Translations under genes and position numbers: made by a program
DNA from: Hypanus sabinus
Taxonomy: Eukaryota
Reading direction: 5' to 3'
NCBI RefSeq assembly: GCF_030144855.1
Contig: NC_082711.1
Span: 47,678,001 to 47,742,000 of the forward strand
Length of the DNA: 64,000 bases
The notes under the pieces: generated by a model
The model's database searches: none
What the model was told of the DNA's origin: nothing
What the model saw: the letters and a program-made list of their open reading frames with translations, nothing else
Shown: piece after piece, positions 745-62,682 of the stretch
Position numbering within the stretch: the first letter of the stretch is position 1
Layout of the letters: each line of letters opens with the position of its first letter

Positions 745-2300
745 ATAACATAAGATCATTAGACATAGCAGTAGAATTAGGCCATTTGGCCCATACAGTA
801 TGCTCCACCATTCAATCATGGCTAGTCCTTTCTTTTCCCTTCTCAGCCCTGCTCCCTGGCCTTATCGCCATAACCTTTGATGCCCTGTCCAATCAAGAAC
901 CAATCAAACTCTGCCCTAAATACACCCAACAAACTGGCCTCTACGGCTGCCTGTGGTAATAAATTCCACAAATTCACCACCCTCCAGCAAAATAACTTTC
1001 TCCGTTTCTCTGTTTTAAATGGATGCCTCTTTATCCTGAGGCTGTGCCCTCTGGTTCTGGACTCCCCCACCATGGGAAACATCCTTTCCACATCTACTCT
1101 GCCTAGACCTTTCAACATTTGAAAGGTTTCAATGAGTCTCGCCCTCCAGCCTTCTAAATTCCAGTGAGTATATACCCAGAGCTAGCAAACATTATAGATA
1201 TGACAAGCCTTCTGGAATCATCCTTGTCAACTTCCTCTGAACCCTCTCCAATGCCAGCACAGCATTTCTTTGATAAGGAGCCCAAAACTGTTTACAATAC
1301 TCAAGGTGAGGCCTTGCTGGTGCCCTATAAATCCTCAGCATCACATCCTTGCTTTTGTATTCTAAACATCTTGAAATTAATGCTAACATTGCATTTGCCT
1401 TCCTCATCACTGACTCTACCTGCAAGTTAACCTTTAGGGTGTTCTGCACAAGGGCTTCCAAGTCCCATTGTATCACAGATTTTTAGATTTTTTCCCCATT
1501 TAGAAAGTAGTCTGCACATCTATTTCTTCTACCAAAGTGCATGACCATGCATTTTCCAACATTGTATTTCATTTGCCACTTTCTTGGCCAGTATCCTAAT
1601 CTGTCTAAGTCCTGTTTCCTCATCACTACCTGCTCCTCCACCAATCTTTGTATCATCTGCAAACTTGGCATCAAAGACATCTATTCCATCATCTAAATCA
1701 TTGATATGCATCATAAAAAGCAGTTTCAACATTGACCCCTGTGGAACACCAATAGTCACTGGCAGCCAACCAGAAAAGGATCTTTTTTATTCCCACATGC
1801 TGTCTCCTACCGAACAGTCAAGGCTTGAACCATGCCTGTAACTTTCCTGTAATACCATGGGCTCTTAACTTGGTAAGCATTTTCATGTATGATACCTTGT
1901 CAAAGGCCTTCTGAAAGACCAAATATACAACATACACTGCATTCTCTTTATCCATCCTACTTGTAGTCTCCTCAAGGAATTCCAACAGGTTTGTCAGTGA
2001 AGATTTCCTTTAAAGAAACCTTGTTGACTTTGTCCTGTGTCACCAAATACTCCATATCCTCATCCTTAACAATTGACTCCAACATCTTCTCAACTACTGA
2101 GGTCAGGCTAACTGGTCTATAATTTCCTTTCCGCCCCCTTCCTTTTTTCTTACAGAGTGGAGTGACATTTGCAATTTTCCAGTCATCTGGTACTATACCA
2201 GAGTCCAGTGATTTTTAAAATATCATTAAATACCTCCGCAATCTCTGCTGCTACCTCTTTCAGAACCAGTTGATCTGGTCCAGGTGATTTCTGTACCCAT
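745..2300 (-). mobile_element. CR1 LINE, 5'-truncated, degraded RT and 3' tail
   Basis: ORF fragments GVPQGS, KFADDTKIGG, KYNVGKCMVMHFG, RPHLEYC, RTRGHSL. Shark-type 3' tail at ~745-790. Confidence 0.92.
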
Positions 2301-12228: not shown

Positions 12229-15200
12229 TCATGGCTGATCATCCAACTCAGAACCCTGTACCTGCTTTCTTTCCATACCCCCGATCCCTTTAACCACAAG
12301 GGCCATATCTAACTTCCTCTTAAATATAGCCAATGAACCGGCCTCAACTGCTTCCTGTGGCAGAGAATTCCACAGATTCACCACTCTCTGTGTGAAGAAG
12401 TTTTTCCTCATCTCGGTCCTAAAAGGCTTCCCCTTTATCCTTAAACTGTGACCCCTCGTTCTGGACTTCCCCAACATCAGAAACAATCTTACTGCATCTA
12501 GCCTGTACAATCCCTTTAGAATTTTATACATTTCAATAAGATCCCCCTTCGATCTTCTAAATTCCAGTGAGTATAAGCCTAGTCGATCCAGTCTTTCTTC
12601 ATCTGAAACTCCTGCCATCCCAGGAATCAATCTGGTGAACCTTCTCTGTACTCCCTCTATGGCAAGAATGTCTTTCCTCAGATTAGGGGACCAAAACTGC
12701 ACACAATATTCTAGGTGCGGTCTCACCAAGGCCTTGTACAACTGCAGTAGAACCTTCCTGCTCCTGTACTCAAATCCTTTTGCTATGAATGCCAACATAC
12801 CATTTGCCTTTTTCATCACCTGCTGTACCGGCACGCCCACCTTCAATGACTGGTGTACAATGACACCCAGGTCTCGTTGCACCTCCCCTTTTCCTAATCA
12901 GCCACCGTTCAGATAATAATCTGTTTTCCTGTTCTTGCAACCAAAGTGGATAACCTCACATTTATCCACATTAAATTGCATCTGCCATGAATTTGCCCAC
13001 TCACCTAACCTATCCAAGTCACCCTGAATCCTCTTAGCATCCTCCTTACAGCTAACACTGCTGCCCAGCTTCGTGTCATCTAAAGACTTGGAGATGCTAC
13101 ATTTAATTCCCTCGTCTAAATCATTAATATATATTGTAAACAACTGGGGTCCCAGCACTGAGTCTTGCGGTACCCCACTAGTCACTGCCTGTCATTCTGA
13201 AAAGGTCCCGTTTACTCCCACTCTTTACTTCCTGTCTGCCAACCAATTCTCTATCCACATCAATACCATACCCCCAATACCGTGTGCTTTAAGTTTGCAC
13301 TCTAATCCCCTGTGTGGGACCTTGTCAAAAGCCTTTTGAAAATCTAGATAAACCACATCCACTGGCTCTCCCCTATCCACTCTACTAGTTACATCTTCAA
13401 AAAATTCTATAAGATTTGTCAGACATGATTTTCCTTTCACAGATCCATGCTGACTTTGTCCGATGATTTCACTTCTTTCCAAATGTGCTGTTATCACATC
13501 TTTGATAACCGACTCTAGCATTTTCCCCACCACCGATGTCAGACTAATCGGTCTATAATTCCCTGGTTTCTCTCTCCCTCCTTTTTTTAAAAAGTGGGGT
13601 TACATTAGCCACCCTCCAATCCTCAGGAACTAATCCAGAATCTAAGGAGTTTTGAAAAATTATCACTAATGCATCCACTATTTCTTGGGCTACTTCCTTA
13701 AGCACTCTGAGATGCAGACCATTTGGCCCTGGGGATTTATCTGCCTTTAATCCCTTCAATTTACCCAACACCACTTCCCTACTAACATGTATTTCCCCCA
13801 GTACCTGCATCTCACTAGACCCTCGGTCCCTTACTATTTCCGGAAGATTACTTATGTCCTCCTTAGTGAAGTCAGAATCAAAATTGTTATTCAATTGGTC
13901 TGCCAAGTCTTTGTTCCCTATGATCAATTCACCTGTTTCTGACTGTAAAGGACTTACATTTGTCTTGACCAATCTTTTTCTTTTCACATATCTATAAAAG
14001 CTTTTACAATCAGTTTTTATGGTCCCTGCCAGCTTTCTCTCAATCTTTTTTCCCTTTCCTAATTAAGCCCTTTGTCCTCCTCCGCTGGTCTCTGAATTTC
14101 TCCCAGTCCTCAGGTGTGCCACTTTTTTTTGCTAATTTATATGTTTCTTCTTTGGACTTGATACTATACCTAATTTCCTTTGTCAGCCATGGGTGCACTG
14201 CCTTCCCTGGTTTATTCTTTTGCCAAACTGGGATGAACAATTGTTGTAGTTCATCCATGCGATCTTTAAATACTTGCCATTGCATATCCACCGTCAACAC
14301 TTTAAGTATCATTTGCCAGTCTATCTTAGCTAATTCACTTCTCATACCTTCAAAGTTACCCTTCTTTAAGTTCAGAACCTTTGTTTCTGAATTAACTATG
14401 TCACTCTCCATCTTAATGAAGAATTCCACCATATTATGGTCACTCTTACCCAAGTGGCCTCGCACGACAAGATTGCTAACTAACCCTTCCTCATTGCTCA
14501 ATACCCAATCTAGAATGGCCTGCTCTCTAGTTGGTTCCTCGACATGTTGGTTCAGAAAACCATCCCACATACATTTCAAGAAATCCTCTTCCTCAGCACC
14601 CTTACCAATTTGGTTCACCCAATCTATATGTAGATTGGAGTCACCCATTATAGCTGCTGTTCCTTTTTTGCACACATTTCTAATTTCCTGTTTAATACCA
14701 TCCCCAACCTCACTACTACTGTTAGGTGGCCTGTACACAACTCCCACCAGCATTTTCTGCCCCTTAGTGTTATGCAGCTCTACCCATATCGATTCCACAT
14801 CCTCCAGGCTAATGTCCTTCCTTTCTATTGCATTAATTTCCTCTCTAACCAGCAATGCTATCCCACCTCCTTTTCTTCCCTGTCTATCCCTCCTGAATAT
14901 TGAATATCCCTGGATGTTGAGCTCCCATCCTTGGTCACCCTGGAGCCATGTCTCTGTGATCCCAACTATATCATATTCATTAATAACTATCGGCACATTC
15001 AATTCATCCACTTTGTTACAAATGCTCCTCGCATTGACACACAAAGCCTTCAGGCTTGTTTTTACAACACTCTTAGCCCTTATACAATTATGTTGAAAAG
15101 TGGCCCTTTTTGCTTTTTGCCCTGGATTTGCCTGCCTGCCACTTTTACTTTTCACCTTACTACTTTTTGCTTCTACCCTCATTTTACACCCCTCTGTCTC

Positions 15201-15230
15201 TCTGCACTTGTGCCCATCCCCCTGCCACAT
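12229..15230 (-). pseudogene. CR1 ORF2: APE endonuclease + reverse transcriptase, broken into ~5 segments
   Basis: NARSI, GITETW, GVVYRPP, MGDSN, SDHN (endonuclease). KSCLTNL, YLDFQKAFDKVPH, GVPQDSVLGP, LDDTK (RT). Breaks near 14040, 13550, 13200 and 12890. Confidence 0.93.
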
Positions 15231-16176
15231 TAGTTTAAAGCCTCCTGAACAGCAGTAGCAAACGCTCCCCCTAGGACATTGGTTCCAGTCCAGCCCAGGT
15301 GCAGACCATCCTGTTTATACTGGTCTCACCTCCCCCAGAACTGGTTCCAGTGCCCCAGAAATTTGAATCCCTCCCCATTGCACCATTTTTCAAGCCATGT
15401 ATTCATCTGAAATATCCTCCTATTTCTACTCTGACTAGCACATGGCACTGGTAGTAATCCAGAGATTATTACCTTTGTGGTCCTACTTTTTAGTTTATCT
15501 CCTAACTCCCTAAATTCACCTTGTAGGACCTCACCCCATTTTTTACCTATATCATTGGTACCTAGGTGCACCACCACCACTGGCTGTTCACCCTCCCATT
15601 CCAGAATGTCCTGCAGCTGCTCAGAGACATCCTTGACCCTTGCACCAGGGAGGCAACATAGCATCTTGGAGTCTCGTTTGCAGCCACAGAAATGCCTATG
15701 AATTCCCCTTACAATCGAATCCCCTATCACTATAGCTCTCCCACTCCTTTTCCTTCCCTCCTGTGCCGCAGAGCCACCCATGGTGCAATGAACTCGGCTG
15801 CTTCTGCCTTCCCCTGATGAGACATCTCCCCCAACAGTATCCAAAACAGTATATCTGTTTAGGAGGGAGATGACCTCAGGGGACTCCTGCACTACCTGCC
15901 TACTGCAACGCTGTCTAGTGGCCACCCCTTCCCTTTCTGCCTGTGTAGCCTTTACCTGCGGTGTGGCCAACTCACTGAACGTGCTATTCACAACTTTCTC
16001 AGCATCGCGGATGCTCCAGTATGAATCCAATCGCAGCTCCAGACGCTCAATGCGGTCTGCCAGAAGCTGCAGCTGGACACACTTCCTGCACACATAGTCG
16101 TCAGGGACACTGGAAGTATCCCTGATTTCCCACATGCTGCAGGATGAACAAACCACGGGCTGATCTCAGCTGCCAT
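15230..16176 (-). pseudogene. CR1 ORF1: zinc finger + coiled coil + SGNH esterase
   Basis: CxxC..CxxC (CSSC..CRKC), GDS, HLGTND, and DGLH read through one TGA at 15326. Likely ATG at 16176 with a 1-nt deletion near 16158. Natural stop TAA at 15232-15230. Confidence 0.9.
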
Positions 16177-16592: not shown

Positions 16593-17282
16593 GACCATAT
16601 AATTCTAAACATTATATTCCATCTGTCACTTTTTTGTCCATGCTCCTACTTTGTCTAATTCCTTCTGCAGACCCTCTGCTTCCTCAACATTACCTGCCCC
16701 TCCACTTATCTTCGTATCATTCACAACCTTGGTCACAAAGCCGTTAATTCATCATCCAAATCATTAATATATAATGTGAAAAGAATCTGTCCCAACACCG
16801 AACCCTGCAGAGCACCACTACCCACCAGCAGCCAACCAGAAATTCCTAATCTTTGCTTCTTTGCCAGTAGGCCAAACTTCTATCTGTGTTAGTATCTTTC
16901 CTGCAATACCAGAGATATTTATATTGTTTAGCTGTTTCATGCTCAGCACTTTCTCAAAGGCCTTCTCAAAATCCAAATAAATAACATCCACTGACTCTCC
17001 TTTGTCTATCCTGCCTGTTATTTCCTCAAAGACTTCCAACAAATTTGTCAGGCAATATTTCTCCTTAAGGAAACCATGCTGATTTTAGCCAATTTAATAT
17101 GTGCATTCAAGCACCCTGAAACCTCATCCTTAATAAAAGCCTCCAACATCTTCCTGACCACTGAAGTCAGACTGACTGGCATATATTTTCCTTTCCTTTG
17201 CTTCACTCCCTTCTTAAAGAGTGGAGTAACATTTACACCTTTCTTGTCCTCAGGAACTATTCCAGAATCTGGTGATCCCTGA
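16593..17282 (-). mobile_element. Older CR1, continuation of 11375-12157
   Basis: VDVIYLDFEKAFEK and NVTPLFKKG..PVSLTSVV remnants. Confidence 0.88.
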
Positions 17283-18169
17283 AAGAATAGAGAGAGGAAG
17301 GGAAGAAGGTCTGGCCCTGATTTTAACATGGACTGACATTGCTAACAGAGAGAAAATACTAGCTGGAAACTTTAAAACATGCATTTTCCTTGCATGATGC
17401 AGATTCTGACTCAATATCTTCTAACTTCATGATAGCAGCCCAGGGCTAGATTGGTTTTCCTGTACTGAATCCACTAGAGAAGGCTTAGATACAAGGATGT
17501 GCTTTCTAATGCCCAATAGAGAGGCTCGGTGTGTGTGAGGAAGCAAATCATGGTGCAATAGACCACAGGGGATGTAGATGGAGTGATTGCACAGAGGGTA
17601 ATTATTCCTACCTCTCCTAGCTCAACATCAGCACTTTTCTCTTTTACAAAATGGCCTTGCCTCCCTTTAGCCACCATACAATGATTAGATAGATTTCCTT
17701 GGATTACTTAGGGTTAAATCTAGAAACTAGATAACACAAGAGGTTATGGATTGTTAGATTAGTCAGCCTAACCACAGGCAGTGAATTTATTCCATATTCC
17801 TCACCGTATCTTCATTAAAACTGGAACTGAGAATTGAAGGAGGGTTGAAGTTACATTTATGAATCTTTTGAAAATTTCATACTCAACATGACACAAACAC
17901 ATGCAATCAAAAGGTTAAAATTTCCCTTCTATCTTCATCTATCAATGTGAAATTATCAGATGAGTGGAGCAAAGGAGAGTTAGAAAATCCCAAACACAGA
18001 AGCCACATGAATAATTAATCAATATGAAAGAATTAGGCTGATAATTATGGCCTGAAGCAAACTGTTTTCTTTTACTTTTCATTGTCTGTGAATAACACTA
18101 GGGGCTAAACTTTGCAGTTTTAATAGCATTGGAACAGTCGGTGTTTGCTATTAACATACAATCAAGCTG

Positions 18170-23611: not shown

Positions 23612-24755
23612 AATGAGGGAAGATTGCAGCATGCTGTTTTGCAGAGTAACTTGAGAGTGTTTGCAATAGTTTATCATGAAGGTAAATAGAATATTGTCCT
23701 TAATTGCTAGAGGGATTGAGTTTAAGAGATGCTGTAATGGTACACAGTACTGCTAGGGCACTGCATGCAGTTCTGGGTTCTTTACTTGAGGGAACATATA
23801 CTGGCTTTGGAGGTGGTGTAGAGGAGGTACATCAGCTTGATTCCAGTAATGTGGGGTTTAGGTTATGAGGAAAGATTGAGTTGCCTGGGACTATACTCAC
23901 TGTACTTCAGAAGAACGAGGGGGATCTCATAGAAACATATAGAGTTATTAAAGGTAGAACTTATGAAAGTTCAAGGTTCAAAATAATAGGATAAATGCAG
24001 CAAAGTTGTTTCCACAGGTAAGTGAGAGGACGTAGCCTTGTAATGAGCTCTTCAGGTCTGTGTGGAGTGCTGGAGAGTGTGGTACTCCAATGTTTTTTTT
24101 TAGAACACCTGAATCATTTAAAATTGTTGTTAATGACAGTCGTTAATTGGTAAGAGTTCCTTGTGTTTTTCTCGAGTGACTCGCTCTTTGCAATGCCGTC
24201 TCCTGGCACCTTCTGTTTGAACTTGTTCAGCTTATTTTGATAGGCTCAGTGATTCTGTGTTAAGTTGTGTTATATAAGCAGATGCCCGATTAGCACTAAT
24301 CTCAAAGTTTTGAGACTGTTACTTCCCATGGTGATGCTCAGCCGAGCCACTGATGTTCTTTTGGAAGTATTATGAATAAATTCTCACTGCCGTCTCTACA
24401 TTGGATTCTATCTTTCCTCTGCAGTTGGGTTCTGATATTGCCGGCACACATCGTGTCAAGCATCAAAGATTTGGGGGTAATAGATTTAGGACACAGATGA
24501 GAAGAAACTGCTCTTTCCAGAGTAGTGAATCAGTGAGATTCTGCCCAGGGAGGCAGTCGGGGCTACCTCATTCAATATATTTAACGTACAGTTAGACAGA
24601 TTTTTGCAAAGCAGGGGAATTAAGGGCTATGAGGAAAAGGCAGGTAGCTGGAGATGAATGCATGACCAGTTCCACCATGATCTCATAAAATGGCAGAGAA
24701 AACTTAATGGAACAGATTGTCTATACTCCTGCTCTAATTTCTTAAGTTCTTATGA
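23612..24755 (+). mobile_element. CR1 3' fragment interrupted by a solo LTR
   Basis: CR1 ORF2 C-terminal remnants and tail ttcttaagttcttatg. Collinear across 24039-24458. Confidence 0.82.
24039..24458 (+). mobile_element. Solo LTR, 420 bp
   Basis: TG...CA ends, TSD agcct/agcat, TATATAA at 24271, AATAAA at 24375. Confidence 0.8.
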
Positions 24756-35030: not shown

Positions 35031-35372
35031 GAAATGAGAGGCATTGATCATGTGGAGAGTCAGAGGCTTTTTCCAAGACTGAAATGGTTGCCACAAGACG
35101 ACACAGGTTTAAAGTGCTGGGGAGTAGGTACAGAGGAGATGTCAGGGATAAGTTTTTTACTCAGAGAGTGGTGAGTGTGTGGAACGGGCTGCCGGTAACG
35201 GTGGCGGAGGCGGATAAAATAGGGTCTTTTAAGAGACTTTTAGATAGGTACATGGAGATTTGTAAAATAGAGGGCTATAGGTAAGCCTAGGAACTTCTAA
35301 GGTAGGGACATGTTCAGCACAACTTTGTGGGCCGGAGGGCCTGTATTGTGCTGTAGGTTTTCTATGTTTCTC
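35031..35372 (+). mobile_element. CR1 3' fragment (same subfamily as 62683-63207)
   Basis: HRFKVLGSRYRGDVRDKFFTQRVVSVWNGLP and tail ttctatgtttct. Confidence 0.9.
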
Positions 35373-41194: not shown

Positions 41195-42410
41195 AAGAAA
41201 AAATAAGGACAGTCAGCATGGATTTGTGTAGAGCAAGCCATGTCTAACTTAACTGAGTTTTTCAAGGAGGTAAAAGAGATGCGGATGTTGTCTACTTTGA
41301 TTTTACTAAGGTCTTTGTCAAGATCCCTCATACACATGCAGAAGATTAAGATGTATGGGATCAATGGTGACTTTGCCATTTGATTCAGAATTGGCTTGTC
41401 CGTAGAAGACAAAGTGTAGTGGTCAATAGGACCTACTCTGACTGGACGTTTGTGATGAGTGGTGCACTGCAGGGATCTGTACTGGGACCTCTGCTGTTTG
41501 TAACAGCCTGGATGGATGGGTGAGCTAGTAAGATTACACACACTGGTAGTGCTGTGTGTAGTGTAGGAGACTGCCAAAGAATACAATGGTATGTAGATCT
41601 GCTACAGATATGGGGAGAGAAATAGCAGGTGGTTTAATCTGGCCAAATGAGAGGTATTACACTTTGGGACATCAAATTCACAGGACCCTTAACAGTGTTG
41701 ATTTACAGAGGGACCTAAGGATCCAAGCACATAGCTCCATGAAGTGGCTATACAGGTTGATAGGGTGGTAAAGAAGGCACATGACATTCTTGCCTTTATT
41801 AATTGAGGCACTGAGTTCAAGAGTTAGGGAGTTAAGCTGCAACTTTATAAAACCTTTGTTCGGCCGAATCGGGAATAATGCATTCAGTGCTGCTCATCCT
41901 ATTATAGAAAGGACGCAGAGGTATTGGAGAGTGTGCAAAGTGGTGTACCAGGATGCTGCCTGGATCAGCGTGCATGTGCTATATGAAACATTTGGACTAA
42001 CTTGGATTTTTTTCTCAGGAGCTGTGGAGGCCAAGGTGAGAGCTGATAAGACTTTGTAAGAATATGAGAAGGACATAGATGGTGGAAGCATCCACCATCT
42101 TTTTTGCAAGTTAAAATGTTTACTACTGGAGGATATGCAAATAAGGTGAGAGGGTTTAATTCAAAGAAGATGTACAGGGCAAGTTATTTTTACACAGAAA
42201 CTGATGGGTGCCTGGAATGTATTTCCAGGGTGGTAGCCGAGGAAAATATGATATAGGCATTTAGAAGACTGTTGGATAGGTACATGAATGTGCAAAGAAC
42301 GGAGAGATGTAGACATTGGGCAGGCAAAAGGATTGGTTTTGTTAGCCATTTAACTTAATTAGTTTGGGATATCATTGTGGATTGAAAAGTCCTGAACTGT
42401 TCTATGATCT
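41195..42410 (+). mobile_element. CR1 RT fragment with tail
   Basis: cagcatggattt (QHGF), cagggatctgtactgggacct (QGSVLGP), QRDL and FFTQ remnants. Confidence 0.85.
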
Positions 42411-45053: not shown

Positions 45054-45478
45054 AAATACACTCAAGCAGTAGGTGGATAATGCAGTGACCATTAATTCAT
45101 TGGGGAGGGGTTTAAGCTAATTTGGCAGGGGGTAGGGAACGGGAGAGATAGGGCTGAGGACTGTGAGGAAGGACAGGCAGATGATAGGGCAAAATTGCAG
45201 TCAGTGGGATGAGCTGAAATATAACATGGGGGCAAAATTGAAGGGGTGGTGAATACAAGACTGAAAGTCTTATACGGAATGAAGTATATGAACTTGTAGT
45301 GCTGTTAGAGATTTGCAGGAATGACAGTGCGGGTATCACGGAGTTGTGGCTGAAAGAAGATCATCAGAGGATATACTTTGTATTGATAGGACAGGCAGGT
45401 AGGCCGGGGGGGGGGGGGGGGGTTGGTGGTTCTACTGGTAAAAAATGAAATCAAATGCTTAGAAGGAGATGACATAGG

Positions 45479-46290: not shown

Positions 46291-47577
46291 GTAGCGAGGA
46301 TGAGGGATATGAATTTCTAAGGGAAATTTTAGAATAGCCATGTAAGTTTTCAATATGCAGGTAGACAGGTTGGTGCTGGATCCCAAGAGAAAGTATTTGT
46401 ACAATGCCTATGAGATGGTTTTTTAGAGCAGTTTGTGGTTGAGCCCACGAAGGGGAAGGCAATTCTGGATTGTGTAATAAACCAGATTTGATTAGGGTCC
46501 TTAAGGCAAAGGGACACTTAGAAGAAAGTGATCCTAATGTGATAGAATTCACCTTGTAGTTTGAGAGGGAGAAGTCAGATGCATCAGTACTGCAGAGGAA
46601 TTGCAGAGGCATGAGAGAGAAGCCAGCCAAAGTTGATTGGAAGGGGACACTAGCAGGAACGATGGCTTGAGTTTCTGGGGATAATTCTGAAGATGAAGAA
46701 TAGATACCTCAAAGATGAATAAGTATTCTAAAGAGAGGATGAGGCAATTTTAGCTGACAAGGGAAGTCAAAGACAACGTAAAATCAAAAGAGAGGTTATA
46801 TAATATAGCAAAAAGTGTGGGAAGTTACAAGATTTGGAAGCTTTATAAAACCAACATAAGGTAACTAACAAAAATGGTAAGCAGTGAAAAGATGAAATTT
46901 GAAGGAAAGCTAGCCAGTAATATCATAGAGAGTACCAAAAGTTTTCTCAGATATATGAAGAGTATATGTAAAGGGAGTGTGGATGTTGGTCCACTGGAAA
47001 TAACCCTGGAGACATAGTAATCGGGGACAAAGAAATAGCGGACAAACTTATTAAGTATTTTGCATTAGTTTTCACTGTAGAAAACACCTGCATTATGCTG
47101 GATAATTGAGAGTATCAGGGGGCAAAGAGAGTGTTGTTGCTATTACTAAGGGGAAGGTGCTTGAGAAGCTGAAAGCTCTGAAGGTACACAAATCATCTAG
47201 ACTAGATGGACTAAGCTCTAAAATTAGCCTGACTTTAGAGATTGGGAAGATGTTGGAGTCCATTATTAAGAATCAGGTTTTGGTGTACTTAGAGGCACAT
47301 GACAAAATAGACCAATGTCAGCATGACTTCCTTGAAGGCTGCCTAACAAGGTAAGAGCCAATGGAATTACAGGAATGTTACTAATATGGATAGAAGATTG
47401 GCTGATTGGCAGGGAACAAAGAATGATAATAATGGGGCCCTTATTTTGGTTGTCTGCTGGCAACTAGTGGTGTTCCACAGGGGTTGCTATTGGGACCACT
47501 GCTTTTCACATTATATGTCAATGGTTTGGAGATGAATTGGTGGCCTTGTGGCCAAATTTGCAGATGATACGAAGACA

Positions 47578-48432
47578 TTTGACCATAAGATAAAGGAGCA
47601 GATTCAGGCCACTCAGCCCATCGATTCTGCTCCACCATTCCATCATGGCTGATTTACTATCCCTCTCAACCTCATTCTCCTGCCTTTTCTCCATAACCTT
47701 TGATGCTCTGAATAATCAAGAAACTATCAAACTTTGCTTTAAATATGCTCCCTGTCTTAGCCTCCACAGCCGCTTGTGGCAACAAATTCTACAGGTTCAC
47801 TACCCTCCGGCTAAATAAATTCTTCCTCATCTCTTTTCTTAAGTCTGAATCACCCACTGGTCCAGGACTCACACACTATAGGAAACACCCTCCATACATC
47901 CAGTCTATCCAGTCCTTCCAATATTCGATGAGACCCCCCCTTCATTTCTGTAAACTCCAATGAGTACAGGCCCTGAGCCATCAAGTGCTCCTCATACACT
48001 AACCCTTTCATTCTCAGAATCATTCTTATAAACCTCCTCTGGACCCTCTACAATGCCATTACAACTTTTCTTAGATAAGGGGCCCAAAACTGCTGAAAAT
48101 ACTGCATGGATATTCAGACCAATACCTTATAAAGCCTCAGCATTATATCCTTCTCTTATATTCTAGTCCTCTCAAAATGAATGCTATCATTACATTTGAC
48201 TTTCTTACCGCTGACTCAACCTGCAAATTAATTTTTAGGGAATCCTGCATAAGGACTCACAGGTCTCTTTGCACTTCTTATTTTTGAATTTTCTCCACAT
48301 TTAGAAAATATTCTGCACCTTTAATCCTTCTACAGAATGCATGACCATACATTTCCCTGCACTATATTCCACCTGCCAATTCCTTGGCCATTCTCCCAAT
48401 CTGTCTGTCTTCTACAGGCTCCCTGCTTCCAC
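47578..48432 (-). mobile_element. CR1 3' fragment inserted in opposite orientation
   Basis: Tail gaccataagataaaggagcag, collinear with 745-1620. Confidence 0.88.
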
Positions 48433-49945: not shown

Positions 49946-52900
49946 TAAATAGTGGTTGGTGCTGCTTCAATACCCTTTGCTGATTTATCCGTCATTATTC
50001 ATGGTCCAATTGTTTTGGTTCTTCAGTGAATATAAATGACATTTGGACTCAGTGGGCATACTTTAATTCACATTTTAATGCATGTTTCCAGAATTCAAAC
50101 AAATAATTCATTACCTTAAGGGGTAGGCTTAATAGAAGGAAAGAAAACATTACTATACGATCATACTTAACAAATTCAATGAGAAGAACGCAAGAAATTA
50201 AGTGTTATGTAAGAGTACAAGAGTAATAAGGATTTGAAGGCTGTTTTAAAAATGTTTGACCAGGCGTAGCATTCCCATCTCAAAGGAAGGAATAGGTGAA
50301 ATAAACTCTTTTGGGACAGGGGTGGAGTACAGGGCATGAGTTCATTTCCTTAGAAGAGCAAACTACAGCAGGTAACAATTATAACCTGCCAAAAGAGGAA
50401 CCTAAAATTGTCACATTTCTTCGCACTCCCTTTACCATTCAGTGAACTATTGCCAGGTTTAACTTTCCATGTAGGAACAGAATTGGGCCACTTGGTTTGG
50501 TGAGTGTGCTCTGCCATTTCATCAAGTATCCCTCTCAGCCCCAATCTCCTGCCTTTTTCCCACATCCCTTCATGTCCTGACCAATTAAGAATCTATCAGC
50601 CTCTGCCTTAAATATACATAAATACTTGGCCTAAACAGCTGCCTGTGGCAAAGAATTCCACAGATTCATAACTCTCCGGCTAAAGTTCCTCCTCATTTCC
50701 ATTCTAAAAGCACACCCCTCTATTCTGAGGCTGTGGTCTCTGTCCTTAGACTCTCCCACCATAGGAAACACCCACTCTATCAAGGCCTTCCAACATTCAA
50801 TTCCTTTCATTGAGGTCACCCCTCATTTTTTTCAATCCCAGTGAATAAAGGCCTGCAACCATCAAATGCTCTTTATGTGACAAGCCATGCAAAGCTGGAA
50901 TCATTTTTGTGAAGCACCTTTGAACTCTCTCCAGTTTCAGCACATCCTTTCTAAGATAAGTTTCCCTAAACTGCTCACAATACTCCAAGTGAGGCCTCAC
51001 CATTGCCTTATAAAGCTTCAACTTTACATCCTTGCTTTTATATTCTAGTCCTCTCAAAATAAATGCTAATATTGCATTTGCCTTCCTCACCACAGACTCA
51101 ACTTGCAAATTAACCTTTATAGAATCCAGCACAAGGACTCCCAAGACCCTTTGCACCTCACATTTTTGAATTTTCTCTCCATTTAGAAAATATACAACCC
51201 TTTCATTTCTTCTACCAAATTGTGTGACCATACACTTCCTGACACCGTATTCCATCTGCCACTTCTTTGCCTATTCTCCTAATCTGTCAAAATCCTTCCA
51301 TGGCCTCTCTGCTTCCTCAGCATTACCTGCCCTTCCACAAACTTTGTATCATCCACAATCTTGGTCACAAAGCCATCAATTCCACCATCCATATCATTGA
51401 AATATAAAGTAAGAAGTAGTGGTCCCAACACAGACCTCCATAGAAAAGCACTAGTCATCGGCAGTGAACCAGAAAAAGCTCTATTTATTCCCACTCCTTG
51501 CCTTCTGCCAATTCAACAATACTCTGTCCATGCCACTATCTTTCCGTTAATATCACGGGCTCTTATCTTCCTAAGCAGTCTCATGTGTGGTACTTTGTCA
51601 AAGGCCTTTTGAAAAACCAAGTACACAACATCCACTGATTTTCCTTTGTCTTTCCTGCTTGTTATTTCCTCAACAAATTCCAACAAATTTGTCAGGCAAG
51701 ATTTTCCCTTAAGGAAATCATGCTGACTCTGGCCTATTTTGTCAAATGCCTCCAAGTGCCCTGAAACCACATTCTTAACAATTGACTCCAATACCTTCCC
51801 AACCACTGAGGTCATACTAACTGACCTATAATTGTTTTTCTTCTGCCTTTGCCCCCTTCTTGAAGAATGGAGTAATATCTGCAATTTTCCAGTCCTCAGG
51901 TACCATAGCCGTAATTGAAAGATCATTATTAATGCCTCCACAATCTCTTCAGCTAACACTTTTAGAACCCTGGAGTGTAGTCCATCTGCTCCAGGTGACT
52001 TATTGTCCTTCAGACCTCTCAGTTTCCCAAGCATCTAGTAATAGCAACGGCACTCAATTCTGCACCTTGACACTCTCAAACTTCTGGCATACTGTTAGTG
52101 TCTTTCATAGTAAAGACTGATGCAAATATATATTCAGTTCATCCACCATTTCCTTGTACCACATTACTATCTCTCTAGCAGCATTTTCCAGTGGTCCAAT
52201 ATCCACTCTCGTCTCACTATATATCTGAAAATCTTTTGGTATCCTCTTTGATATTATTGCTTAGCTTTCTTTCATATTTCATCTTTTCTCTCCTTATGGT
52301 TTTTTTGTTGCCTTCTATTGGTTTTTAAAAGCTTTGCAATTCTCTAACTTACCACTACTTTTTGCTCTATCTTACGTTGTCTCTTTGCTTTGGCTTCCCT
52401 TGTCAGCTTCCATCATCCTGCCGTTCTTCTTCTTTGGGGTGTATCTATCCTGGACCTTCCTAATTACTCCCAGATACTCCAGCAATTGCTGCTCTGCTGT
52501 CATCCCTACTAGTACCCCCTTCCAATCACCTTTGTCCTGCACCTCTCTGTAATTCCCTTTACTTAACTATAATACTGCTACACTTGACTTTAGCTTCACC
52601 TTCTCAAATAAATTCTATCACATATGATCACTGCTGCTACGGATTCCTTGACCTGAAGCTCTCTCATCAATTCCAGTTCATTGCACAATGCCCAGTTCAG
52701 AATAGCTAATCCCCTAGAGGGCTCAACCATGAGCTGCTCTAAAAGCCATCATATAGACATTCTACAAATTCCCCCTCTTGGAATCCAGTACCAACCTAAT
52801 TTTCCCCAATCTACCTGCGCATTGAAATCCCCCAGAACTATTGTAGCATCGCCCTTTGAAATTCATTTTTTATCTCCTGTTATAATTTATAGCCCACATC

Positions 52901-53282
52901 TATGCTATTGTTCAGAGGTCTGTATATAACTCCAGCAGAGTCTTTTTACCCTCACAGTTGTAACCACTACCCATAACAATTCTACACCTTCTGACCCTAT
53001 GTCACCTCTTTCCAAGGATTTGATTTCATTTATTACCAACAGAGCCACGCCACCCCCTCTGCCTTCCTGTCTCTCTCAAAACAATGTTAAGCTCCCAGCT
53101 ATATTTTTCTTTCACCCATGATTCAGTGATGCCCACAACATCATACCCGCCAATTTGTAACCGTACTACAAACTCACCTACCTTATTCAGTACACTGTAG
53201 GCCTCAAATATACCTTCAGTCCTGAATGCATCACCCCTTTTGATTTGTCTCCCTTTTACATTACTCATCCCATTGAGTGCAA

Positions 53283-53650: not shown

Positions 53651-54471
53651 TTTCGCCCTAGCGTCATCCTCTCCTTGCTAGCAGTCTCACTTCACACTGC
53701 CTCTGTTTATAAACTGACTACTCCATCCTCAGCCCTATCACTCAGGTTCCTTCCCCCCTGCCAAATTAGTTTGAACTCTCCTGAACAGCCCTTGTAAAGC
53801 TACCTGCAAGATTATTTATTCCCCTTAGGTTCAGGGGTAACCAGGTCCCTTTGGTACAGGTCATACCATCCCCAGAAGAGGTCCCAATGATCCAGAAATC
53901 GGAACCCCTGCTCCCTGCTCCAGTTCCTCGGCTACGTAATTATCTGCCAAGTGCTCCTATTCTTACGCTCACTGGCACGTGGCACAGGCAGCAATTCAAA
54001 GATTACTATCCTGGAGGCCCTGCTTTGCAGCTTTCTACTTGGCTCCCTAAAGTATCTCTTCAGGATCTCCTCTCCTTTCCTCCCTATGTCATTGGTACCG
54101 GGGTAGAAACCAACCTAGACTTCTGGCTGCTCATCCCCCCTCTTTAAAATGCCGTGGACCTGATCTGAGATGTCCCTGATCCTGGCACCTGAGCTGCAAC
54201 ATGTCCCTGTCGCGCCCACAGAATTCTTCTATGGGATTTCCTGCCACTACTGCACTCCTCCTCACCTCTCTTCTCTTCTAAGGTGAAGAGCCAGACTCAG
54301 TGCCAAAGACCTAGTTGCTACAGCTCTCCCTTGATAGTTTGTCCCCCTTGACAGCATCCTAAAAGATATATATATTATTGAGGGGAATGGCCACAGGAGT
54401 ACCCTGTAACGGTTGGCCATTTCACTTTCTTCTCCTGACAGTCACCCAGTTACCTGTCTCCTGCAACCTAG

Positions 54472-55686
54472 AGTCATAGACAAGTACAGCACAGAAACAG
54501 GCCCTTTGGCCCATTTAGTCCATGCCAAACCATGTAAACTATGTACTCCTTTCAACCTGCAGTGAGAACATAGCCCTCTATACCCCTACCGTCCATTCAC
54601 CTAATCAAACTTCCCTTAAACATTGAAATTGAGATTGCATGCACCACTTGTGCTGGCAACTCGTTCCAAACTCTCTGAGTGACAAAGTTCCCTCTCATGT
54701 TCCCCTTGAACTTTTCACCTTTCACCCTTAACCTCTACTTGTAGTCCCACACAACTTCAGTGCAAAATGCCTGCTTACATTTAACTGATCTATACCTCTC
54801 TTTATTTTGTATACCTCTATTAAATCTCCCCTCAATCTTCTACTTTCCAAGGAATAAACTCCTAATCTTTCTATATAACTCAGGTCCTCCAGTCCCAGCA
54901 ACATCCTTGTAAATTTTTGCAGTACTCTTTCAACCTTATTTACATCTTTCCTATAGGGAGATGACCAAAAGTGCACACAATACTAAAAATTAGGCTTCAC
55001 CAATGCCTTATACAATTTCAATATAACATCTAATTTTATGTACTCAGTACTTTGATTTATGAAGGCCAATGTACCATAAGTTTTTTTACAACCCTATCTA
55101 CTTGTGACACCACTTTTAATTAATTATGGACCAGTATTCCCAGATTCCTCTGTTCTACAGCACTCCTCAATGCCCTACCGTTCACTCTGTAGGACCCACT
55201 CTGGTTGGTACTACCGATGTGGAACACCTCACACTTGTCTACATTAAGTTCAGACAAAAGCTGCCTTTTTCCAGCTGCTCCAGATCCCTGTCCGGTAGTT
55301 TTCCTCGCTGTCCACTACCTCCCCTTTCATCGGCAAATTTGCTGATCCAGTTGACCACATTATCATCCAGATCATTGATACAGATGACAAACAACAAACC
55401 CAGCGCCGATCCCTGCAGCACTCCAGTAGTCAAGTCAGACAGGTAACCATCTGCTACCACTTACAAATAAGCTGGATGAACTCAGCTTATTTTCAGGCTG
55501 CTGAAAGGAGCAGTCAATGTTCCAGGCCAAGACCACTCTCTGTCTTCTCACATAAAGCCAGTGTCTTATCCAATTTACTACCTCATCTTGAATGTCGAAC
55601 TTTTTTGACCAACCTCCCTTCCAGGACCCTGTCAAATGCCTTGTTAAATTCCATGAAGCCAACATCCAAAGTCTTCCCTTCATTAT
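54472..55686 (-). mobile_element. CR1 3' fragment nested in ORF1 of the old CR1
   Basis: GVLQGSALGLLFVICINDLDD..SKFAD and RRLRGDLIEVYKI. cctag on both flanks (54467-71, 55687-91). Confidence 0.88.
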
Positions 55687-56859
55687 CCTAGGGATGACTA
55701 CCTTCAGTCTCCTCTATGAGCTGAATATCCATCGAGCTGCAGCTCCAGTTTTTTAACACTTCCTCTGAGGAGCTGCATCTTATTACACGGTGAAGATGTG
55801 GTTATCTCGAACGCTGGAGCTCTCTCAGAACTCCCACATTTCACACAAAGAACACAACACAGCCCCTGAAATCATTCTTACTGTATTAATGTGGCCTAAC
55901 AAACAAGGAATGCCTGATCTCACCTAAACGTGGTGAGCCAAAGTAACTCTAACACTCACCCAAAGTGCACTCCACTTACCCTTGTCTTTTTTTTAATTCG
56001 CTCTTTCTAATGAATCCCGTTCACTGATTGGGCACAGCTTGAACTGCTGTGAAGCGCTGCTTTTTAAATCTTCAATCGCATACCCGTGTGAAATGGCCAC
56101 TTCTTTTCATGCACCTGTTCACTGATTGGGCACAGTTCCAGCTCTGAAAACTGCCGTGAAAGGCTGCCTTTTAAATCTTCAGTTGCGGACGTGCTTGCAT
56201 TTACCCGATCTATACTCCTGGTAATTTTGATTACCTTTACCCTAACTATACCTGTGTGAAGTAGCCGTTTCTTCTTATGCTCCTATTCACTGATTGGGCG
56301 CAGTCCTAACTCCCTTGAAGCACTAGCCAGCTAACTAGCTTGCATTTTAAAAGCATTTCCAGCTTGCCAGATTTATTAATTATTATATTAGTTACTCCAT
56401 CCTCGGGGCCAATAATATGTTCTGACTGCAAATAAATCAACTAACCTCATACCATAATACAAGGTCAATGAGTGGTAATTATATTGAACTTTTAACATAA
56501 TAAAGTGCCTGAAGACACTTCACAGAAATGCTATCAAATAAAACTTGACATGGCTGTATGAGAAGAAAGGGACAGTTTTCCAGGAGCAATACAAAGAAGA
56601 ATAAAAAGAGGACATGAGGTAACGTGTGCGTAAGATACAGTGGGGTTGACATTTTTTAAAGTGCACCCAGGAGAGCTTTTTGAACTAGTGTGAAGATGGT
56701 TCGACTGGAGAAAGGGCGGTACTAGACCTTGCATTAGGGCATGTAACTGGGCAAGTGATTTAATTGTTAATAGGAGATAGTGACTATAGTCTTTAAAGTG
56801 GTTATGCAAAGGGATAAGGAAGGTCCAGAAATTAAGACCCTGAATTTCAAAATCTTATT

Positions 56860-57282
56860 ACAGGACTCACTGGAACTTAGAAGAATGTGTGGGGATCTTA
56901 TTGCAACCTACCAAGTATTAAAAGGACTAGACAGGGTGGATTTGGAGAGGATGTTTCCTACGGTGGGGGTGTCCAGAACTAGAGAGCATAGCCTCAAAAT
57001 TGAGGGGTGACTGTTCAGAAACAAAGTAAGGAGGAATGTTTTTAGCCAGACAGTAGTAAATCTGTGGAATGTTCTGCCAGAGACTGCGGTGGAGGCCAAC
57101 TCCATGGGTATACTTAAAGCAGAAGTTGATGTTTCCTGAATGGTCAGTGCTTCAAAGGATCTGGTGAGAAGACAGGTGTATGGGGTTGAGTAGGATCTGA
57201 GATCAGCCATGATGGAGTGGAAGTGCAGACTCAATGGGCTGAATGGCCTAATTCTGTTCCTATGTCTTATGGTCTTATGGAC
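56860..57282 (+). mobile_element. CR1 3' fragment
   Basis: GDLIATYQVLKGLDRVDLERMFP and tail cttatggtcttatgg. Confidence 0.9.
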
Positions 57283-57779: not shown

Positions 57780-59345
57780 CAAGAACGAGGGAAAGATTAA
57801 AACTCACTGAGGACAAAAATGGCAATCTGTGCATGATTGCAGAAATTACAGCAAGGTCTGAACATCTCACTGGAGAGATTGTTGGAGAATTCAGGGTATG
57901 GTAAACTTAGTAAACAGGTTATCACTAAATTGGAGGAGTCTTTGATTATCATACTAGATATAAAGGTGAATAAATCCCGTGACCTAATGAGGTATAGCCC
58001 TGTTTGCTGTGGGATGAAAGGGAGGAGATTACTAAGGCCTAAAAAAAATTATTGAAACTTTACTGGTCACAGGTGACATGGCAGAAAAATTAGAAAAAAA
58101 ATAAATGTGACTTGTTCAGTCTAGAAGGTATAAGGGTTGAGTCAGGTAATTTAAGCCTGTGAATCTAACATCAATGGTTGGGAAGTTATTGTAAAAAAAA
58201 TCTGACATATAACTCTATCCACACTTCAAAGCACAGGAAGTATTGATGAATTAATTTGTATTTTCTCTCCACTTAGAGATAACCAACCCTTTAATTTCAT
58301 CTAATTAAAGATGTCCTCATGGCCTCGTTAGGGGAAGATCCTATCTGACAAATGTGTTTGGATTTTGATTGAATTGTTTGAAAAGATGTTAAAATATATT
58401 GAAGAGCGAAGATGGATAGGTGATGCTGTATACATAGATTTCATTAAGTTCTTTGACCAAGTCACACAAAAGAAACTGCTCAAAACGGTGAGAGCTCAAA
58501 TTGGCAAAATAGTTCCAAAATTCGCTTGGTAAGAGAAGATAGAGAGTGATGATATTTGCTGAAACCCTCACGTTTTGTTATATACAGTATATTAACAATT
58601 TTAGTATGAATGGAAAAGGTATGATTAATAACTTTGCAGATTGCTAATAATGTGAACAGTCATTTGTTACAGGAAGAAATTGATCAGTTGGCAAACTGAG
58701 CTGATGGAATTTAATCCTGATTAGTGTGAGGCAATACACAGTGAGAGGATTAATGAAGATAGGACAGAGACAGTGAATAGAAGATCCTAGGGAGGACTGA
58801 GAAATAGAGAGACCTCAAATGTGCAAGGATCATTGAAGGTGGGAGTGCATTTGGATTAGGTAGTGAAAGGGCATACGAGATACTCACGTTCTTTAGCTAG
58901 GGCATGGAGTATAAGATAGGGTAGGTTTTTGCACAGCATAATGAATAATTTGTTAGGCCATAGCTGAAGTATGGTGTGCATTTCTGGTTGCAGTTTTAAA
59001 GAAAGGATGTAGTTGCATTGGAAAAAATGCGAAGGAGTTTCACCAGGAATATTATTTGGGATGAAGCATTTCAGATAAGAGGAGAACCCAGATTAACCGG
59101 GTTTGTTTTTCTTGGAGCAGGGGATGCTGAGGAAGATCCTCAGAAAATTATACAAAATTACGGGAGTATAGACAATGTAGATAATAGAAAACTTTTGCTC
59201 ATGGCAGAGGCATCTAAAACTATAGAGCACAGGGTAAGAAGTAAAATGTCAAGAGAGGATCTGAGAAAGAGCATCTCACGCAGAGTGTAGTTGACTTCTG
59301 GATTTCACTGCTGGAGGCAGGTATTCTTACAACTTCTAAGAAACA
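57780..59345 (+). mobile_element. Old degraded CR1 ORF2 fragment
   Basis: Eroded SLTSMVGK, HGLVRGRSYLTN and YGVHFW-type remnants. Confidence 0.7.
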
Positions 59346-59359
59346 TGATCACTTAAGTT

Positions 59360-62480: not shown

Positions 62481-62682
62481 GTATAAGGTGTGATCAACAT
62501 AATACTTGTAGTCCTATACATGAAAATTTCTGCAGTTGCTGGAAATCCAAAGCAACACGCACAAAATGATGGATTAATTCAGCAGGTCCTATGTTACAAC
62601 TTCAAAAGATCAGCTCTGCATTCTTTTTAGGTATATCTGCACATGCCTTTTCAGACCTCACACTGACTTCTGGCTTGATAAT

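What the first reader, a model, noticed from the sequence alone, without database searches (positions are those of the whole stretch)
15200..15245. Candidate -1 programmed ribosomal frameshift joining CR1 ORF1 and ORF2 (U_UUA_AAC + stop + G-rich tract)
Seen: on the minus strand ORF1 ends GAG GCT TTA AAC TAA. The heptamer T TTA AAC (15239-15233) is in the correct X_XXY_YYZ phase and sits directly before the stop. The -1 frame reads TTT AAA CTA ATG TGG CAG GGG, which is ORF2, and is followed by GGCAGGGGGATGGG. Two other, diverged CR1 copies keep the same junction with one substitution each at different positions: 45111-45132 TTTAAGC-TAA-TTTGGCAGGGGG and 53775-53755 (minus) TTCAAAC-TAA-TTTGGCAGGGGG. 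Both have ATT, not ATG. Established: U_UUA_AAC is the coronavirus slippery site, and LINE ORF2 is usually explained by reinitiation. Inference: the conserved feature is the slippery site rather than the TAATG overlap, so these CR1s may make a gag-pol-like esterase-EN-RT fusion. I cannot tell whether this has been published.
Basis: partly seen in the sequence, partly recalled or inferred. Interest (0 to 1): 0.8.

Follow-up and report, generated by a model that had tools for sequence, protein, structure and literature searches.

The report
Frameshift signal joining CR1 LINE genes
The end of the first gene of these shark CR1 jumping elements carries a conserved ribosome-slipping motif, which suggests that the second gene (endonuclease and reverse transcriptase) is made as a fusion by a -1 frameshift, the way retroviruses make Gag-Pol; the three copies in this window are dead fossils of that signal.

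Summary
Three decayed CR1 copies in the window share the junction heptamer, stop and G-tract (15213-15239 minus, 45111-45132 plus, 53754-53775 minus).

I fetched ten ORF1/ORF2 junctions from seven lineages with under 60% ORF1 identity (sharks, skates, a bird, unknown animals). Every one has a slippery heptamer in the X_XXY_YYZ phase, with ORF2 (EN+RT) open in the -1 frame from it.
- The heptamer is U_UUA_AAC in six and C_UUA_AAC in the bird.
- It is G_GGA_AAC and A_AAA_AAC in two related families, and A_AAA_AAC in a fourth family, 11 codons before the stop.

The terminal Leu and Asn codons never vary synonymously, unlike the 12 other invariant Leu columns. The codon before them changes amino acid but keeps its third-position U. 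Four lineages have no AUG before the endonuclease domain, and only one fetched lineage plus window copy 1 has UAAUG. A G-run starts 9-13 nt downstream in all ten, but I found no stable structure.

Best reading: programmed -1 frameshifting makes an ORF1-ORF2 fusion (about 0.7). This rests on comparison only, with no experiment. No paper I could search reports it. Four other first-reader notes on this genome say the same.

The parts
15233..15239 (-). Slippery heptamer T_TTA_AAC, the last two codons of ORF1 plus the third base of the codon before them (copy 1)
   Evidence: In phase with ORF1. Among the best-supported differences that one search lists at 5% or more of reads, none falls here; 45 further rows were not shown.
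15230..15232 (-). ORF1 stop codon TAA, directly after the heptamer
   Evidence: The stop is TAA or TAG directly after the heptamer in 9 of 10 fetched junctions.
15228..15230 (-). ATG overlapping the stop (TAATG). Not a conserved feature.
   Evidence: Position 15228 reads as ATT in 391 of 877 X21 reads. It is ATT in window copies 2 and 3. The ATG is absent in 9 of 10 fetched junctions.
15213..15226 (-). G-rich tract GGCAGGGGGATGGG; its G5 run starts 11 nt after the heptamer
   Evidence: A run of at least four G starts 9-13 nt after the heptamer in 10 of 10 lineages, and Gly codons there are GGG in 67% of cases against 31% background, p=2e-4.
15233..16126 (-). ORF1 remnant of CR1 copy 1 (Cys motif, coiled coil, GDSL esterase), with a private in-frame TGA at 15326-15328
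   Evidence: Pfam Lipase_GDSL_2; translation; tblastn 57% to the L006 ORF1; TGA to TGG in 95-100% of reads.
12307..15233 (-). ORF2 remnant of CR1 copy 1 (EN and RT), in the -1 frame relative to ORF1; the frame is broken after 396 codons
   Evidence: Pfam Exo_endo_phos; tblastn to the L006 ORF2, residues 1-958.
45111..45132 (+). Junction of CR1 copy 2: mutated heptamer TTTAAGC, TAA, ATT, G tract. The copy appears cut off at the 5' side just upstream of the junction (my reading of the sequence).
   Evidence: ORF2 fragments at 46736-47437.
53754..53775 (-). Junction of CR1 copy 3: mutated heptamer TTCAAAC, TAA, ATT, G tract
   Evidence: ORF1 at 53815-54463 and ORF2 at 50565-53208 on the minus strand.

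Best explanation
The junction is the fossil of a programmed -1 ribosomal frameshift signal used by CR1-group LINEs that carry an esterase-type ORF1.

Proposed mechanism in an active element (inferred):
- A ribosome translating ORF1 reaches the last two codons, UUA AAC. They are preceded by a U, so the site reads U_UUA_AAC.
- A fraction of ribosomes slip one base back. The two tRNAs re-pair on UUU AAA.
- Those ribosomes read CUA instead of the stop and continue into ORF2, making an ORF1p-linker-EN-RT fusion.
- The remaining ribosomes terminate and make ORF1p alone. This gives a Gag to Gag-Pol type ratio.

The stop codon directly after the heptamer and a G-run 9-13 nt downstream are conserved parts of the signal. 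How they act is inferred, not shown.

What is shown here: the sequence anatomy, its phase and its conservation. What is inferred: the slipping itself and the existence of the fusion protein.

The three window copies are dead. Copy 1 has premature stops in both ORFs. Copies 2 and 3 have mutated heptamers. Nothing is expected to frameshift at this locus today.
For: 1. Ten junctions from seven lineages with under 60% ORF1 identity all have an in-phase heptamer. It is TTTAAAC in six (L001-L006), CTTAAAC in the swallow (L013), GGGAAAC in L007, and AAAAAAC in L015 and L016.
2. L007 and L015 have 61% identical ORF1s and differ by the coordinated change GGG to AAA. This keeps X=X=X, as tandem slippage requires.
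3. ORF2 is in the -1 frame in 10 of 10 junctions, although the linker to the EN motif varies from 40 to 81 codons.
4. The -1 frame stays open from the heptamer for 31-63 codons before any AUG in intact ORF2s: L004 (over 1003 codons), L006 (970) and L007 (over 824).
5. L002, L003, L015 and L016 have no in-frame AUG before the EN domain. In L015 the first Met is at codon 132, while the Pfam EN match starts at residue 50.
6. Synonymous sites: of 13 invariant Leu columns in six ORF1s, only the terminal one uses a single codon (TTA). Of 3 invariant Asn columns, only the terminal one is always AAC.
7. The codon before them varies in amino acid (A, D, T, G, S) but ends in T.
8. At protein level, 69 of 120 ORF1 relatives with a complete C-terminus end in LN and 8 end in QGN. 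These relatives include a snake, a lizard, a turtle and a bird. Only 1 of the 69 has, before LN, a residue whose codons cannot end in U (background 16-20%, p=1e-4).
9. Within this genome, read depth peaks over the junction core and many reads match only that core. In the core, the listed variants are the ATG/ATT position and the middle base of the codon before the heptamer.
Against: - No experiment, transframe peptide or ribosome profile exists here.
- There is no significant Watson-Crick structure within 120 nt downstream (z -1.35 to +2.05). A G-quadruplex appears in the best fold in only 3 of 10 lineages. The usual 3' stimulator is therefore missing or unconventional.
- The one amniote junction read as DNA has an imperfect first position (C_UUA_AAC) and comes from a decayed copy.
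- Six of the ten lineages do have an in-frame AUG between the junction and the EN domain (L001, L004-L007, L013), so separate initiation is possible there.
- About 30% of the listed ORF1 relatives do not end in N, and I could not read their DNA.
- The title of Kajikawa et al. 2012 (cited in PMC13343379; paper not read) reports low dependency of zebrafish ZfL2-1 retrotransposition on ORF1p. A fusion may therefore not be obligatory in every relative.
- The lineages are related, so the p-values are rough.
Confidence: 0.7

Rival explanations
1. Termination-reinitiation. Ribosomes finish ORF1 at the stop. Some 40S subunits stay on the RNA and restart ORF2 nearby, at the overlapping AUG where there is one (as in SART1 UAAUG) or at a non-AUG codon (as proposed for human L1). 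The conserved junction motif and G-run would be the tethering signal.
For: Window copy 1 and L001 have TAATG, the motif shown to work in SART1 (Kojima 2005, as described in PMC3894237 and PMC3708506). The stop codon sits directly at the junction in 9 of 10 lineages. AUG-independent ORF2 initiation is the favoured view for human L1 (PMC5009743). No classical frameshift-stimulating structure was found.
Against: The AUG is missing in 9 of 10 fetched junctions and in about 45% of this genome's copies. Reinitiation does not explain five observations: the three bases before AAAC are always a triplet of one base or nearly so (UUU, GGG, AAA); the third position of a variable codon is fixed; ORF2 is always in the -1 frame; the linker stays open back to the heptamer; and in L016 the heptamer lies 11 codons before the stop.
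Confidence: 0.2
2. The motif is conserved for a reason unrelated to ORF2 translation, such as a C-terminal Leu-Asn needed by ORF1p or an RNA motif for packaging. ORF2 would start independently at a downstream AUG or an internal entry site.
For: ORF1 proteins end in LN in most families. In-frame AUGs lie shortly before the EN domain in L004-L007 and L013.
Against: A protein-level need for Leu-Asn would allow synonymous codons, yet none are seen while all other invariant Leu and Asn columns vary. LN is replaced by GN or KN exactly where the heptamer becomes GGGAAAC or AAAAAAC. Four lineages lack any AUG before the EN domain. An untranslated spacer would not stay open and in one frame across seven lineages.
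Confidence: 0.07
3. Chance or simple shared ancestry. The three window copies look alike at the junction only because they descend from one recent master copy.
For: Copies 2 and 3 belong to one subfamily and all three copies are decayed.
Against: The same architecture recurs in lineages with 22-60% ORF1 identity, where synonymous sites are otherwise scrambled: the identical-codon fraction is 0.40-0.58. An in-phase heptamer is expected at roughly 1 in 500 codon positions (my estimate).
Confidence: 0.03

Closest known systems
Canonical -1 programmed ribosomal frameshifting of retroviruses, LTR retroelements and RNA viruses (Gag-Pol; coronavirus and arterivirus U_UUA_AAC or G_UUA_AAC; astrovirus A_AAA_AAC; polerovirus G_GGA_AAC)
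   Same: An X_XXY_YYZ heptamer in phase. A downstream polymerase ORF in the -1 frame with no start codon of its own in several lineages. The expected outcome is a structural-protein-to-polymerase fusion in low ratio. The heptamer variants seen here are ones that established knowledge lists as functional.
   Different: The host is a non-LTR (LINE) element. The upstream protein is an esterase-type ORF1p, not a capsid. The 0-frame stop follows the heptamer directly in most lineages. No pseudoknot or stable hairpin was found; a short G-run 9-13 nt downstream is the only conserved 3' feature.
SART1 (Bombyx non-LTR element) UAAUG termination-reinitiation, Kojima et al. 2005
   Same: A LINE with ORF1 and ORF2 joined at an overlapping stop-start. 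Window copy 1 and L001 literally have UAAUG.
   Different: The AUG is not conserved here, whereas the heptamer is. No downstream structure like the one required in SART1 was detected. That mechanism gives separate proteins, not a fusion.
Frameshift sites with an adjacent 0-frame stop (barley yellow dwarf virus and related plant viruses; the potato virus M 'shifty stop'), recalled from memory and not checked here
   Same: The slippery sequence is followed at once by the stop codon of the upstream ORF.
   Different: Those viruses use defined local or long-range RNA structures. None is established here. One weak long-range candidate is noted under Noticed in passing.
PRRSV nsp2TF frameshifting, stimulated by a protein bound to an unstructured C-rich motif about 11 nt downstream (from memory, not checked here)
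   Same: A short linear, unstructured, conserved motif at about the same spacing downstream of the shift site.
   Different: The motif here is G-rich, and no binding protein is known or tested. This is an analogy for what the G-run might do, not evidence.

Membership tests
Canonical -1 PRF signal | Slippery heptamer X_XXY_YYZ in the phase of the upstream ORF | tested here: met
   TTTAAAC, GGGAAAC or AAAAAAC in phase in 9 of 10 lineages; CTTAAAC in the decayed bird copy.
Canonical -1 PRF signal | Downstream ORF in the -1 frame and open from the shift site | tested here: met
   10 of 10 lineages. Open for 824 to over 1003 codons in L004, L006, L007, L015 and L016.
Canonical -1 PRF signal | Heptamer conserved at synonymous positions across diverged relatives | tested here: met
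   The terminal Leu and Asn are the only single-codon cases among 13 Leu and 3 Asn invariant columns. The third-position U before them is kept under changing amino acids. Among the differences listed at 5% or more of reads, none falls in the heptamer.
Canonical -1 PRF signal | Stable RNA structure (pseudoknot or hairpin) 5-9 nt downstream | tested here: not met
   Fold z-scores of -1.35 to +2.05 for 120 nt downstream in 8 sequences. A G-quadruplex is in the best fold in 3 of 10. Only a G-run at +9 to +13 is conserved. Pseudoknots and long-range partners were not searched exhaustively.
Canonical -1 PRF signal | Transframe fusion protein made at a measurable rate | not testable with these tools
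   Needs a reporter assay, mass spectrometry or ribosome profiling.
UAAUG-type termination-reinitiation (SART1, influenza B, caliciviruses) | Start codon overlapping or within a few nt of the upstream stop, in the ORF2 frame | tested here: not met
   Present only in L001 and window copy 1. It is ATT in copies 2 and 3 and in about 45% of reads. No nearby in-frame AUG in L002-L007, L013, L015 or L016.
UAAUG-type termination-reinitiation (SART1, influenza B, caliciviruses) | Upstream or downstream RNA element that holds the post-termination ribosome | tested here: inconclusive
   No significant downstream fold. Complementarity to 18S rRNA was not tested.
CR1-group LINE with esterase-type ORF1 | ORF1 with a Cys motif, coiled coil and SGNH/GDSL esterase; ORF2 with APE-type endonuclease and reverse transcriptase | tested here: met
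   Pfam Lipase_GDSL_2 and Exo_endo_phos in the window copy. EN and RVT_1 in L004, L006, L007, L015 and L016. Relatives are named from sharks, rays, squamates, a turtle and a bird.

The most novel reading that the evidence does not exclude
A -1 frameshift that makes an ORF1p-ORF2p fusion is the ancestral and general way in which esterase-ORF1 CR1/L2-group LINEs of animals express their endonuclease and reverse transcriptase. It would run on an unusual stimulator: the adjacent stop codon plus an unstructured G-run 9-13 nt downstream. That G-run might be read by a protein (a host G-run binder or ORF1p itself) rather than by an RNA pseudoknot. This would give the first LINE group with a defined ORF2 translation mechanism, and a Gag-Pol-like particle logic outside LTR elements.
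Probability: 0.35. Interest if true: 0.9.

Novelty: new variant of a known kind. Interest (0 to 1): 0.78.

Why it matters
How LINEs translate ORF2 from a bicistronic RNA is a long-standing open question. The answers so far are SART1 UAAUG reinitiation, 2A peptides in some ORF1-less elements, and an undefined AUG-independent route in human L1 (PMC3894237, PMC5009743).

CR1-group elements are the dominant retrotransposons of most vertebrates (PMC13343379). That 2026 survey, the 2016 frameshifting review and the ORF1 evolution paper (PMC4120745) contain no mention of a frameshift at this junction.

A conserved, phase-correct heptamer with compensatory variants makes the question directly testable with a short reporter. 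If confirmed, three things follow:
- ORF2p would enter the particle as a fusion to a multimerising ORF1p.
- This would explain low ORF2p stoichiometry and cis preference in these elements.
- Annotation would change: ORF2 would have no start codon, and fused gene models would be real.

Tried and rejected
- **Local RNA structure as stimulator.** Folding 120 nt downstream in 8 sequences gave nothing beyond shuffles. I rejected it as a consistent feature.
- **G-quadruplex.** It appears in the best fold in only 3 of 10 lineages, and several lineages cannot form four G-runs with loops. I did not adopt it.
- **Long-range pairing of the G tract.** The best recurring partner is the CLPGA-coding 14-mer 426 nt upstream. 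Its duplex energies are only 1-3 sd better than shuffles. I kept it as an unexplained note, not a claim.
- **Rfam.** No family matched in the window.
- **Other collections.** Scans of bacterial genome contigs and viral contigs with the ORF1 profile returned only bacterial GDSL enzymes or nothing. The metagenome scan gave one useful locus, L007, one fragment and one bacterial gene.
- **Large assemblies.** Four look-ups (Hemitrygon twice, Hypanus, and one more) returned no DNA. No ray other than Leucoraja, and no squamate or turtle junction, could be read as DNA.
- **Literature.** Nine searches and seven papers were read for 'frameshift', 'overlap' or 'slippery'. I found no report of -1 PRF in CR1. 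Kojima 2005 and Kapitonov 2009 are not held. The original CR1 papers (Haas 1997, Kajikawa 1997, Kapitonov and Jurka 2003) and Repbase notes were not searchable, so prior mention cannot be excluded.
- **Splicing.** TAG|GTAAG after the stop in L007 and L015 resembles a splice donor. It lies after the stop and is not conserved in sharks, so I rejected it as the joining mechanism.
Full report
**What is in the window.**
On the minus strand, the window reads GAG GCT TTA AAC TAA TG TGG CAG GGG GAT GGG.
- The heptamer T_TTA_AAC lies at 15239-15233, the stop at 15232-15230 and an overlapping ATG at 15230-15228.
- GGCAGGGGGATGGG lies at 15226-15213.
- The upstream frame encodes a Cys motif, a coiled coil and a GDSL esterase (Pfam Lipase_GDSL_2).
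- The -1 frame encodes an APE-type endonuclease and continues into reverse-transcriptase-like sequence.

All three copies are dead.
- Copy 1 has a private TGA 32 codons before the ORF1 stop. Other copies read TGG there in 95-100% of reads. Its ORF2 is also broken.
- Copies 2 and 3 carry one substitution each inside the heptamer.
- The window holds more than ten further CR1 fragments.

**Whose element it is.**
The ORF1 piece finds relatives in sawshark, stingrays, skates and chimaera, so the genome is chondrichthyan. A profile search of 1.8 billion representative proteins finds 6729 relatives. Named ones include a snake, a lizard, a turtle and a swallow. This is the esterase-ORF1 CR1 group.

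**Junctions elsewhere.**
I fetched DNA for ten junctions. Their ORF1 proteins fall into seven lineages with under 60% identity.
- Six (L001-L006: a shark-like contig, two little-skate loci, two unnamed assemblies, and a contaminant contig in a bacterial assembly) end ORF1 with xxT TTA AAC followed by TAA or TAG.
- The swallow CR1 (L013/L014, decayed) has GCC TTA AAC TAG.
- Three more distant elements carry other canonical slippery heptamers in the same phase:
  - L007 has CAG GGA AAC TAG.
  - L015 has TCA AAA AAC TAG.
  - L016 has TCA AAA AAC 11 codons before the ORF1 stop, inside a true ORF1/ORF2 overlap.
- L007 and L015 are relatives (61% ORF1 identity) and differ by GGG to AAA. This is a coordinated change that keeps the three X positions identical.

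In all ten, the EN+RT frame is -1 relative to ORF1 and is open from the heptamer (Pfam). The linker to the endonuclease motif varies from 40 to 81 codons.

**Start codons.**
- Only L001 and window copy 1 have the TAATG overlap.
- L002, L003, L015 and L016 have no in-frame AUG before the endonuclease domain. In L015 the first Met is codon 132, while the Pfam endonuclease match begins at residue 50.
- In L004, L006 and L007, which have long intact ORF2s, the frame is open for 31-63 codons upstream of the first AUG, right back to the heptamer. An untranslated spacer would have no reason to stay open.

**Constraint at the nucleotide level.**
- In a codon alignment of six ORF1s, lineage pairs share only 40-58% of codons at identical residues.
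- Twelve of 13 invariant Leu columns use 2-4 different codons. The terminal Leu uses TTA in all six.
- Of three invariant Asn columns, only the terminal one is always AAC.
- The preceding codon changes amino acid (Ala, Asp, Thr, Gly, Ser) but always ends in T.
- At protein level, 69 of 120 relatives with a complete C-terminus end in LN and eight end in QGN.
- The residue before LN takes 12 identities. Only once is it one whose codons cannot end in U, against a background of 16-20% (p about 1e-4).

**Within this genome.**
I laid Hi-C raw reads of two related samples on 15050-15450 at 85% likeness or more.
- Depth over 15218-15245 is two to four times that of the flanks.
- Hundreds of reads match only the core, about 15213-15253, and diverge on both sides. 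Subfamilies that are otherwise unlike share this core.
- Among the listed differences, the core varies at two positions:
  - Position 15228 reads ATG or ATT. ATT makes up 45% of reads in one sample and 5% in the other.
  - Position 15240 is the middle base of the codon before the heptamer, giving GCT, GGT or GAT.
- Nothing is listed inside the heptamer or the stop. However, 45 weaker rows were not shown.
- A contig from an RNA library spans the junction. This does not prove transcription.

**The 3' side.**
- A run of four or more G starts 9-13 nt after the heptamer in all ten lineages.
- Gly codons there are GGG in 67% of cases, against 31% elsewhere in the same elements (p=2e-4). This points to a nucleotide-level constraint.
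- I found no consistent structure. Folds of the next 120 nt are no better than shuffles.
- A G-quadruplex is predicted in only three of ten lineages.
- The best long-range partner is weak.
- The stimulator is therefore unresolved. The adjacent stop codon and the G-run are the only conserved candidates.

**Interpretation.**
The following observations match a -1 programmed frameshift that yields an ORF1p-ORF2p fusion:
- the phase of the heptamer;
- the fixed -1 relation of ORF2;
- the open linker;
- the missing start codons;
- the synonymous conservation;
- the replacement of one canonical heptamer by others.

The main rival is termination-reinitiation, as shown for SART1 or as proposed in AUG-independent form for L1. 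It fits the adjacent stop and the lack of structure. It does not fit the heptamer rules, the fixed frame or L016, where the site lies 11 codons before the stop. I put -1 frameshifting at about 0.7, reinitiation at 0.2, and other readings below 0.1. Nothing here measures frameshifting. The claim rests on comparative sequence evidence from a limited set of lineages that are not fully independent.

**Novelty.**
- The 2016 review of frameshifting names only HeT-A and TART among non-LTR elements.
- Reviews of LINE translation call the ORF2 mechanism unknown.
- A 2026 survey of CR1-group elements and a 2014 study of their ORF1 contain none of the words frameshift, overlap or slippery.
- Older subscription papers and Repbase notes could not be searched.
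- Four other first-stage notes on this genome report the same motif. They are not independent evidence.

Noticed in passing
window 15656-15669 (minus strand, estimated: 426 nt upstream of the ORF1 stop); L001, L002, L004, L006 at the same offset: The 14-mer TGCCTCCCTGGTGC (codons for C-L-P-G-A of the esterase) is identical at nucleotide level in five lineages with about 50% protein identity. It can pair with the G tract after the stop; duplex energies are 1-3 sd better than shuffles. It may be a long-range partner or just codon bias.
   Followed up: partly
L006 (GCA_019909505.1, JADHER010000072.1, 4159 nt): A contig in an assembly labelled Pseudomonas aeruginosa holds a complete, intact vertebrate-type CR1 element (ORF1 of 294 aa, ORF2 of 939-970 aa). 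Its ORF1 is annotated in NCBI as a bacterial SGNH/GDSL hydrolase. This is almost certainly animal DNA contamination.
   Followed up: partly
window 894-2223, 16611-17296, 23753-23923, 35034-35257, 41205-42289, 46736-48405, 54591-55792, 56867-57130, 58781-60080, 62682-63095: At least ten further CR1 ORF2 fragments lie on both strands, mostly 3' parts. This is the usual 5'-truncated LINE pattern, and the window is largely CR1 debris.
   Followed up: partly
proteins P0104, P0118, P0079, P0162: Some ORF1 relatives end in ...FFR...FFH or ...FFN instead of LN, GN or KN. Their DNA might hold a U-rich slippery site (U_UUU_UUN type), or they may lack the signal. The DNA could not be fetched.
   Followed up: no
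protein P0187 (Hirundo rustica RMC19703.1, 860 aa): A swallow gene model annotated as a reverse-transcriptase protein clusters at 90% identity with the 356-aa ORF1 protein. Some annotation pipelines may therefore already emit joined ORF1-ORF2 models for CR1.
   Followed up: no
L007:1651-1660 and L015:1344-1353: The stop and the next bases read TAG|GTAAGG and TAG|GTAAAG, which resemble a 5' splice donor. The pattern is not conserved in the shark and skate elements.
   Followed up: partly
runs X1-X12: Near-identical 31-mers of this 401-nt stretch occur in runs labelled as more than ten different coded organisms (word shares 0.5-0.74). This suggests either a very slowly evolving CR1 family shared among related species or cross-sample carry-over.
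   Followed up: no
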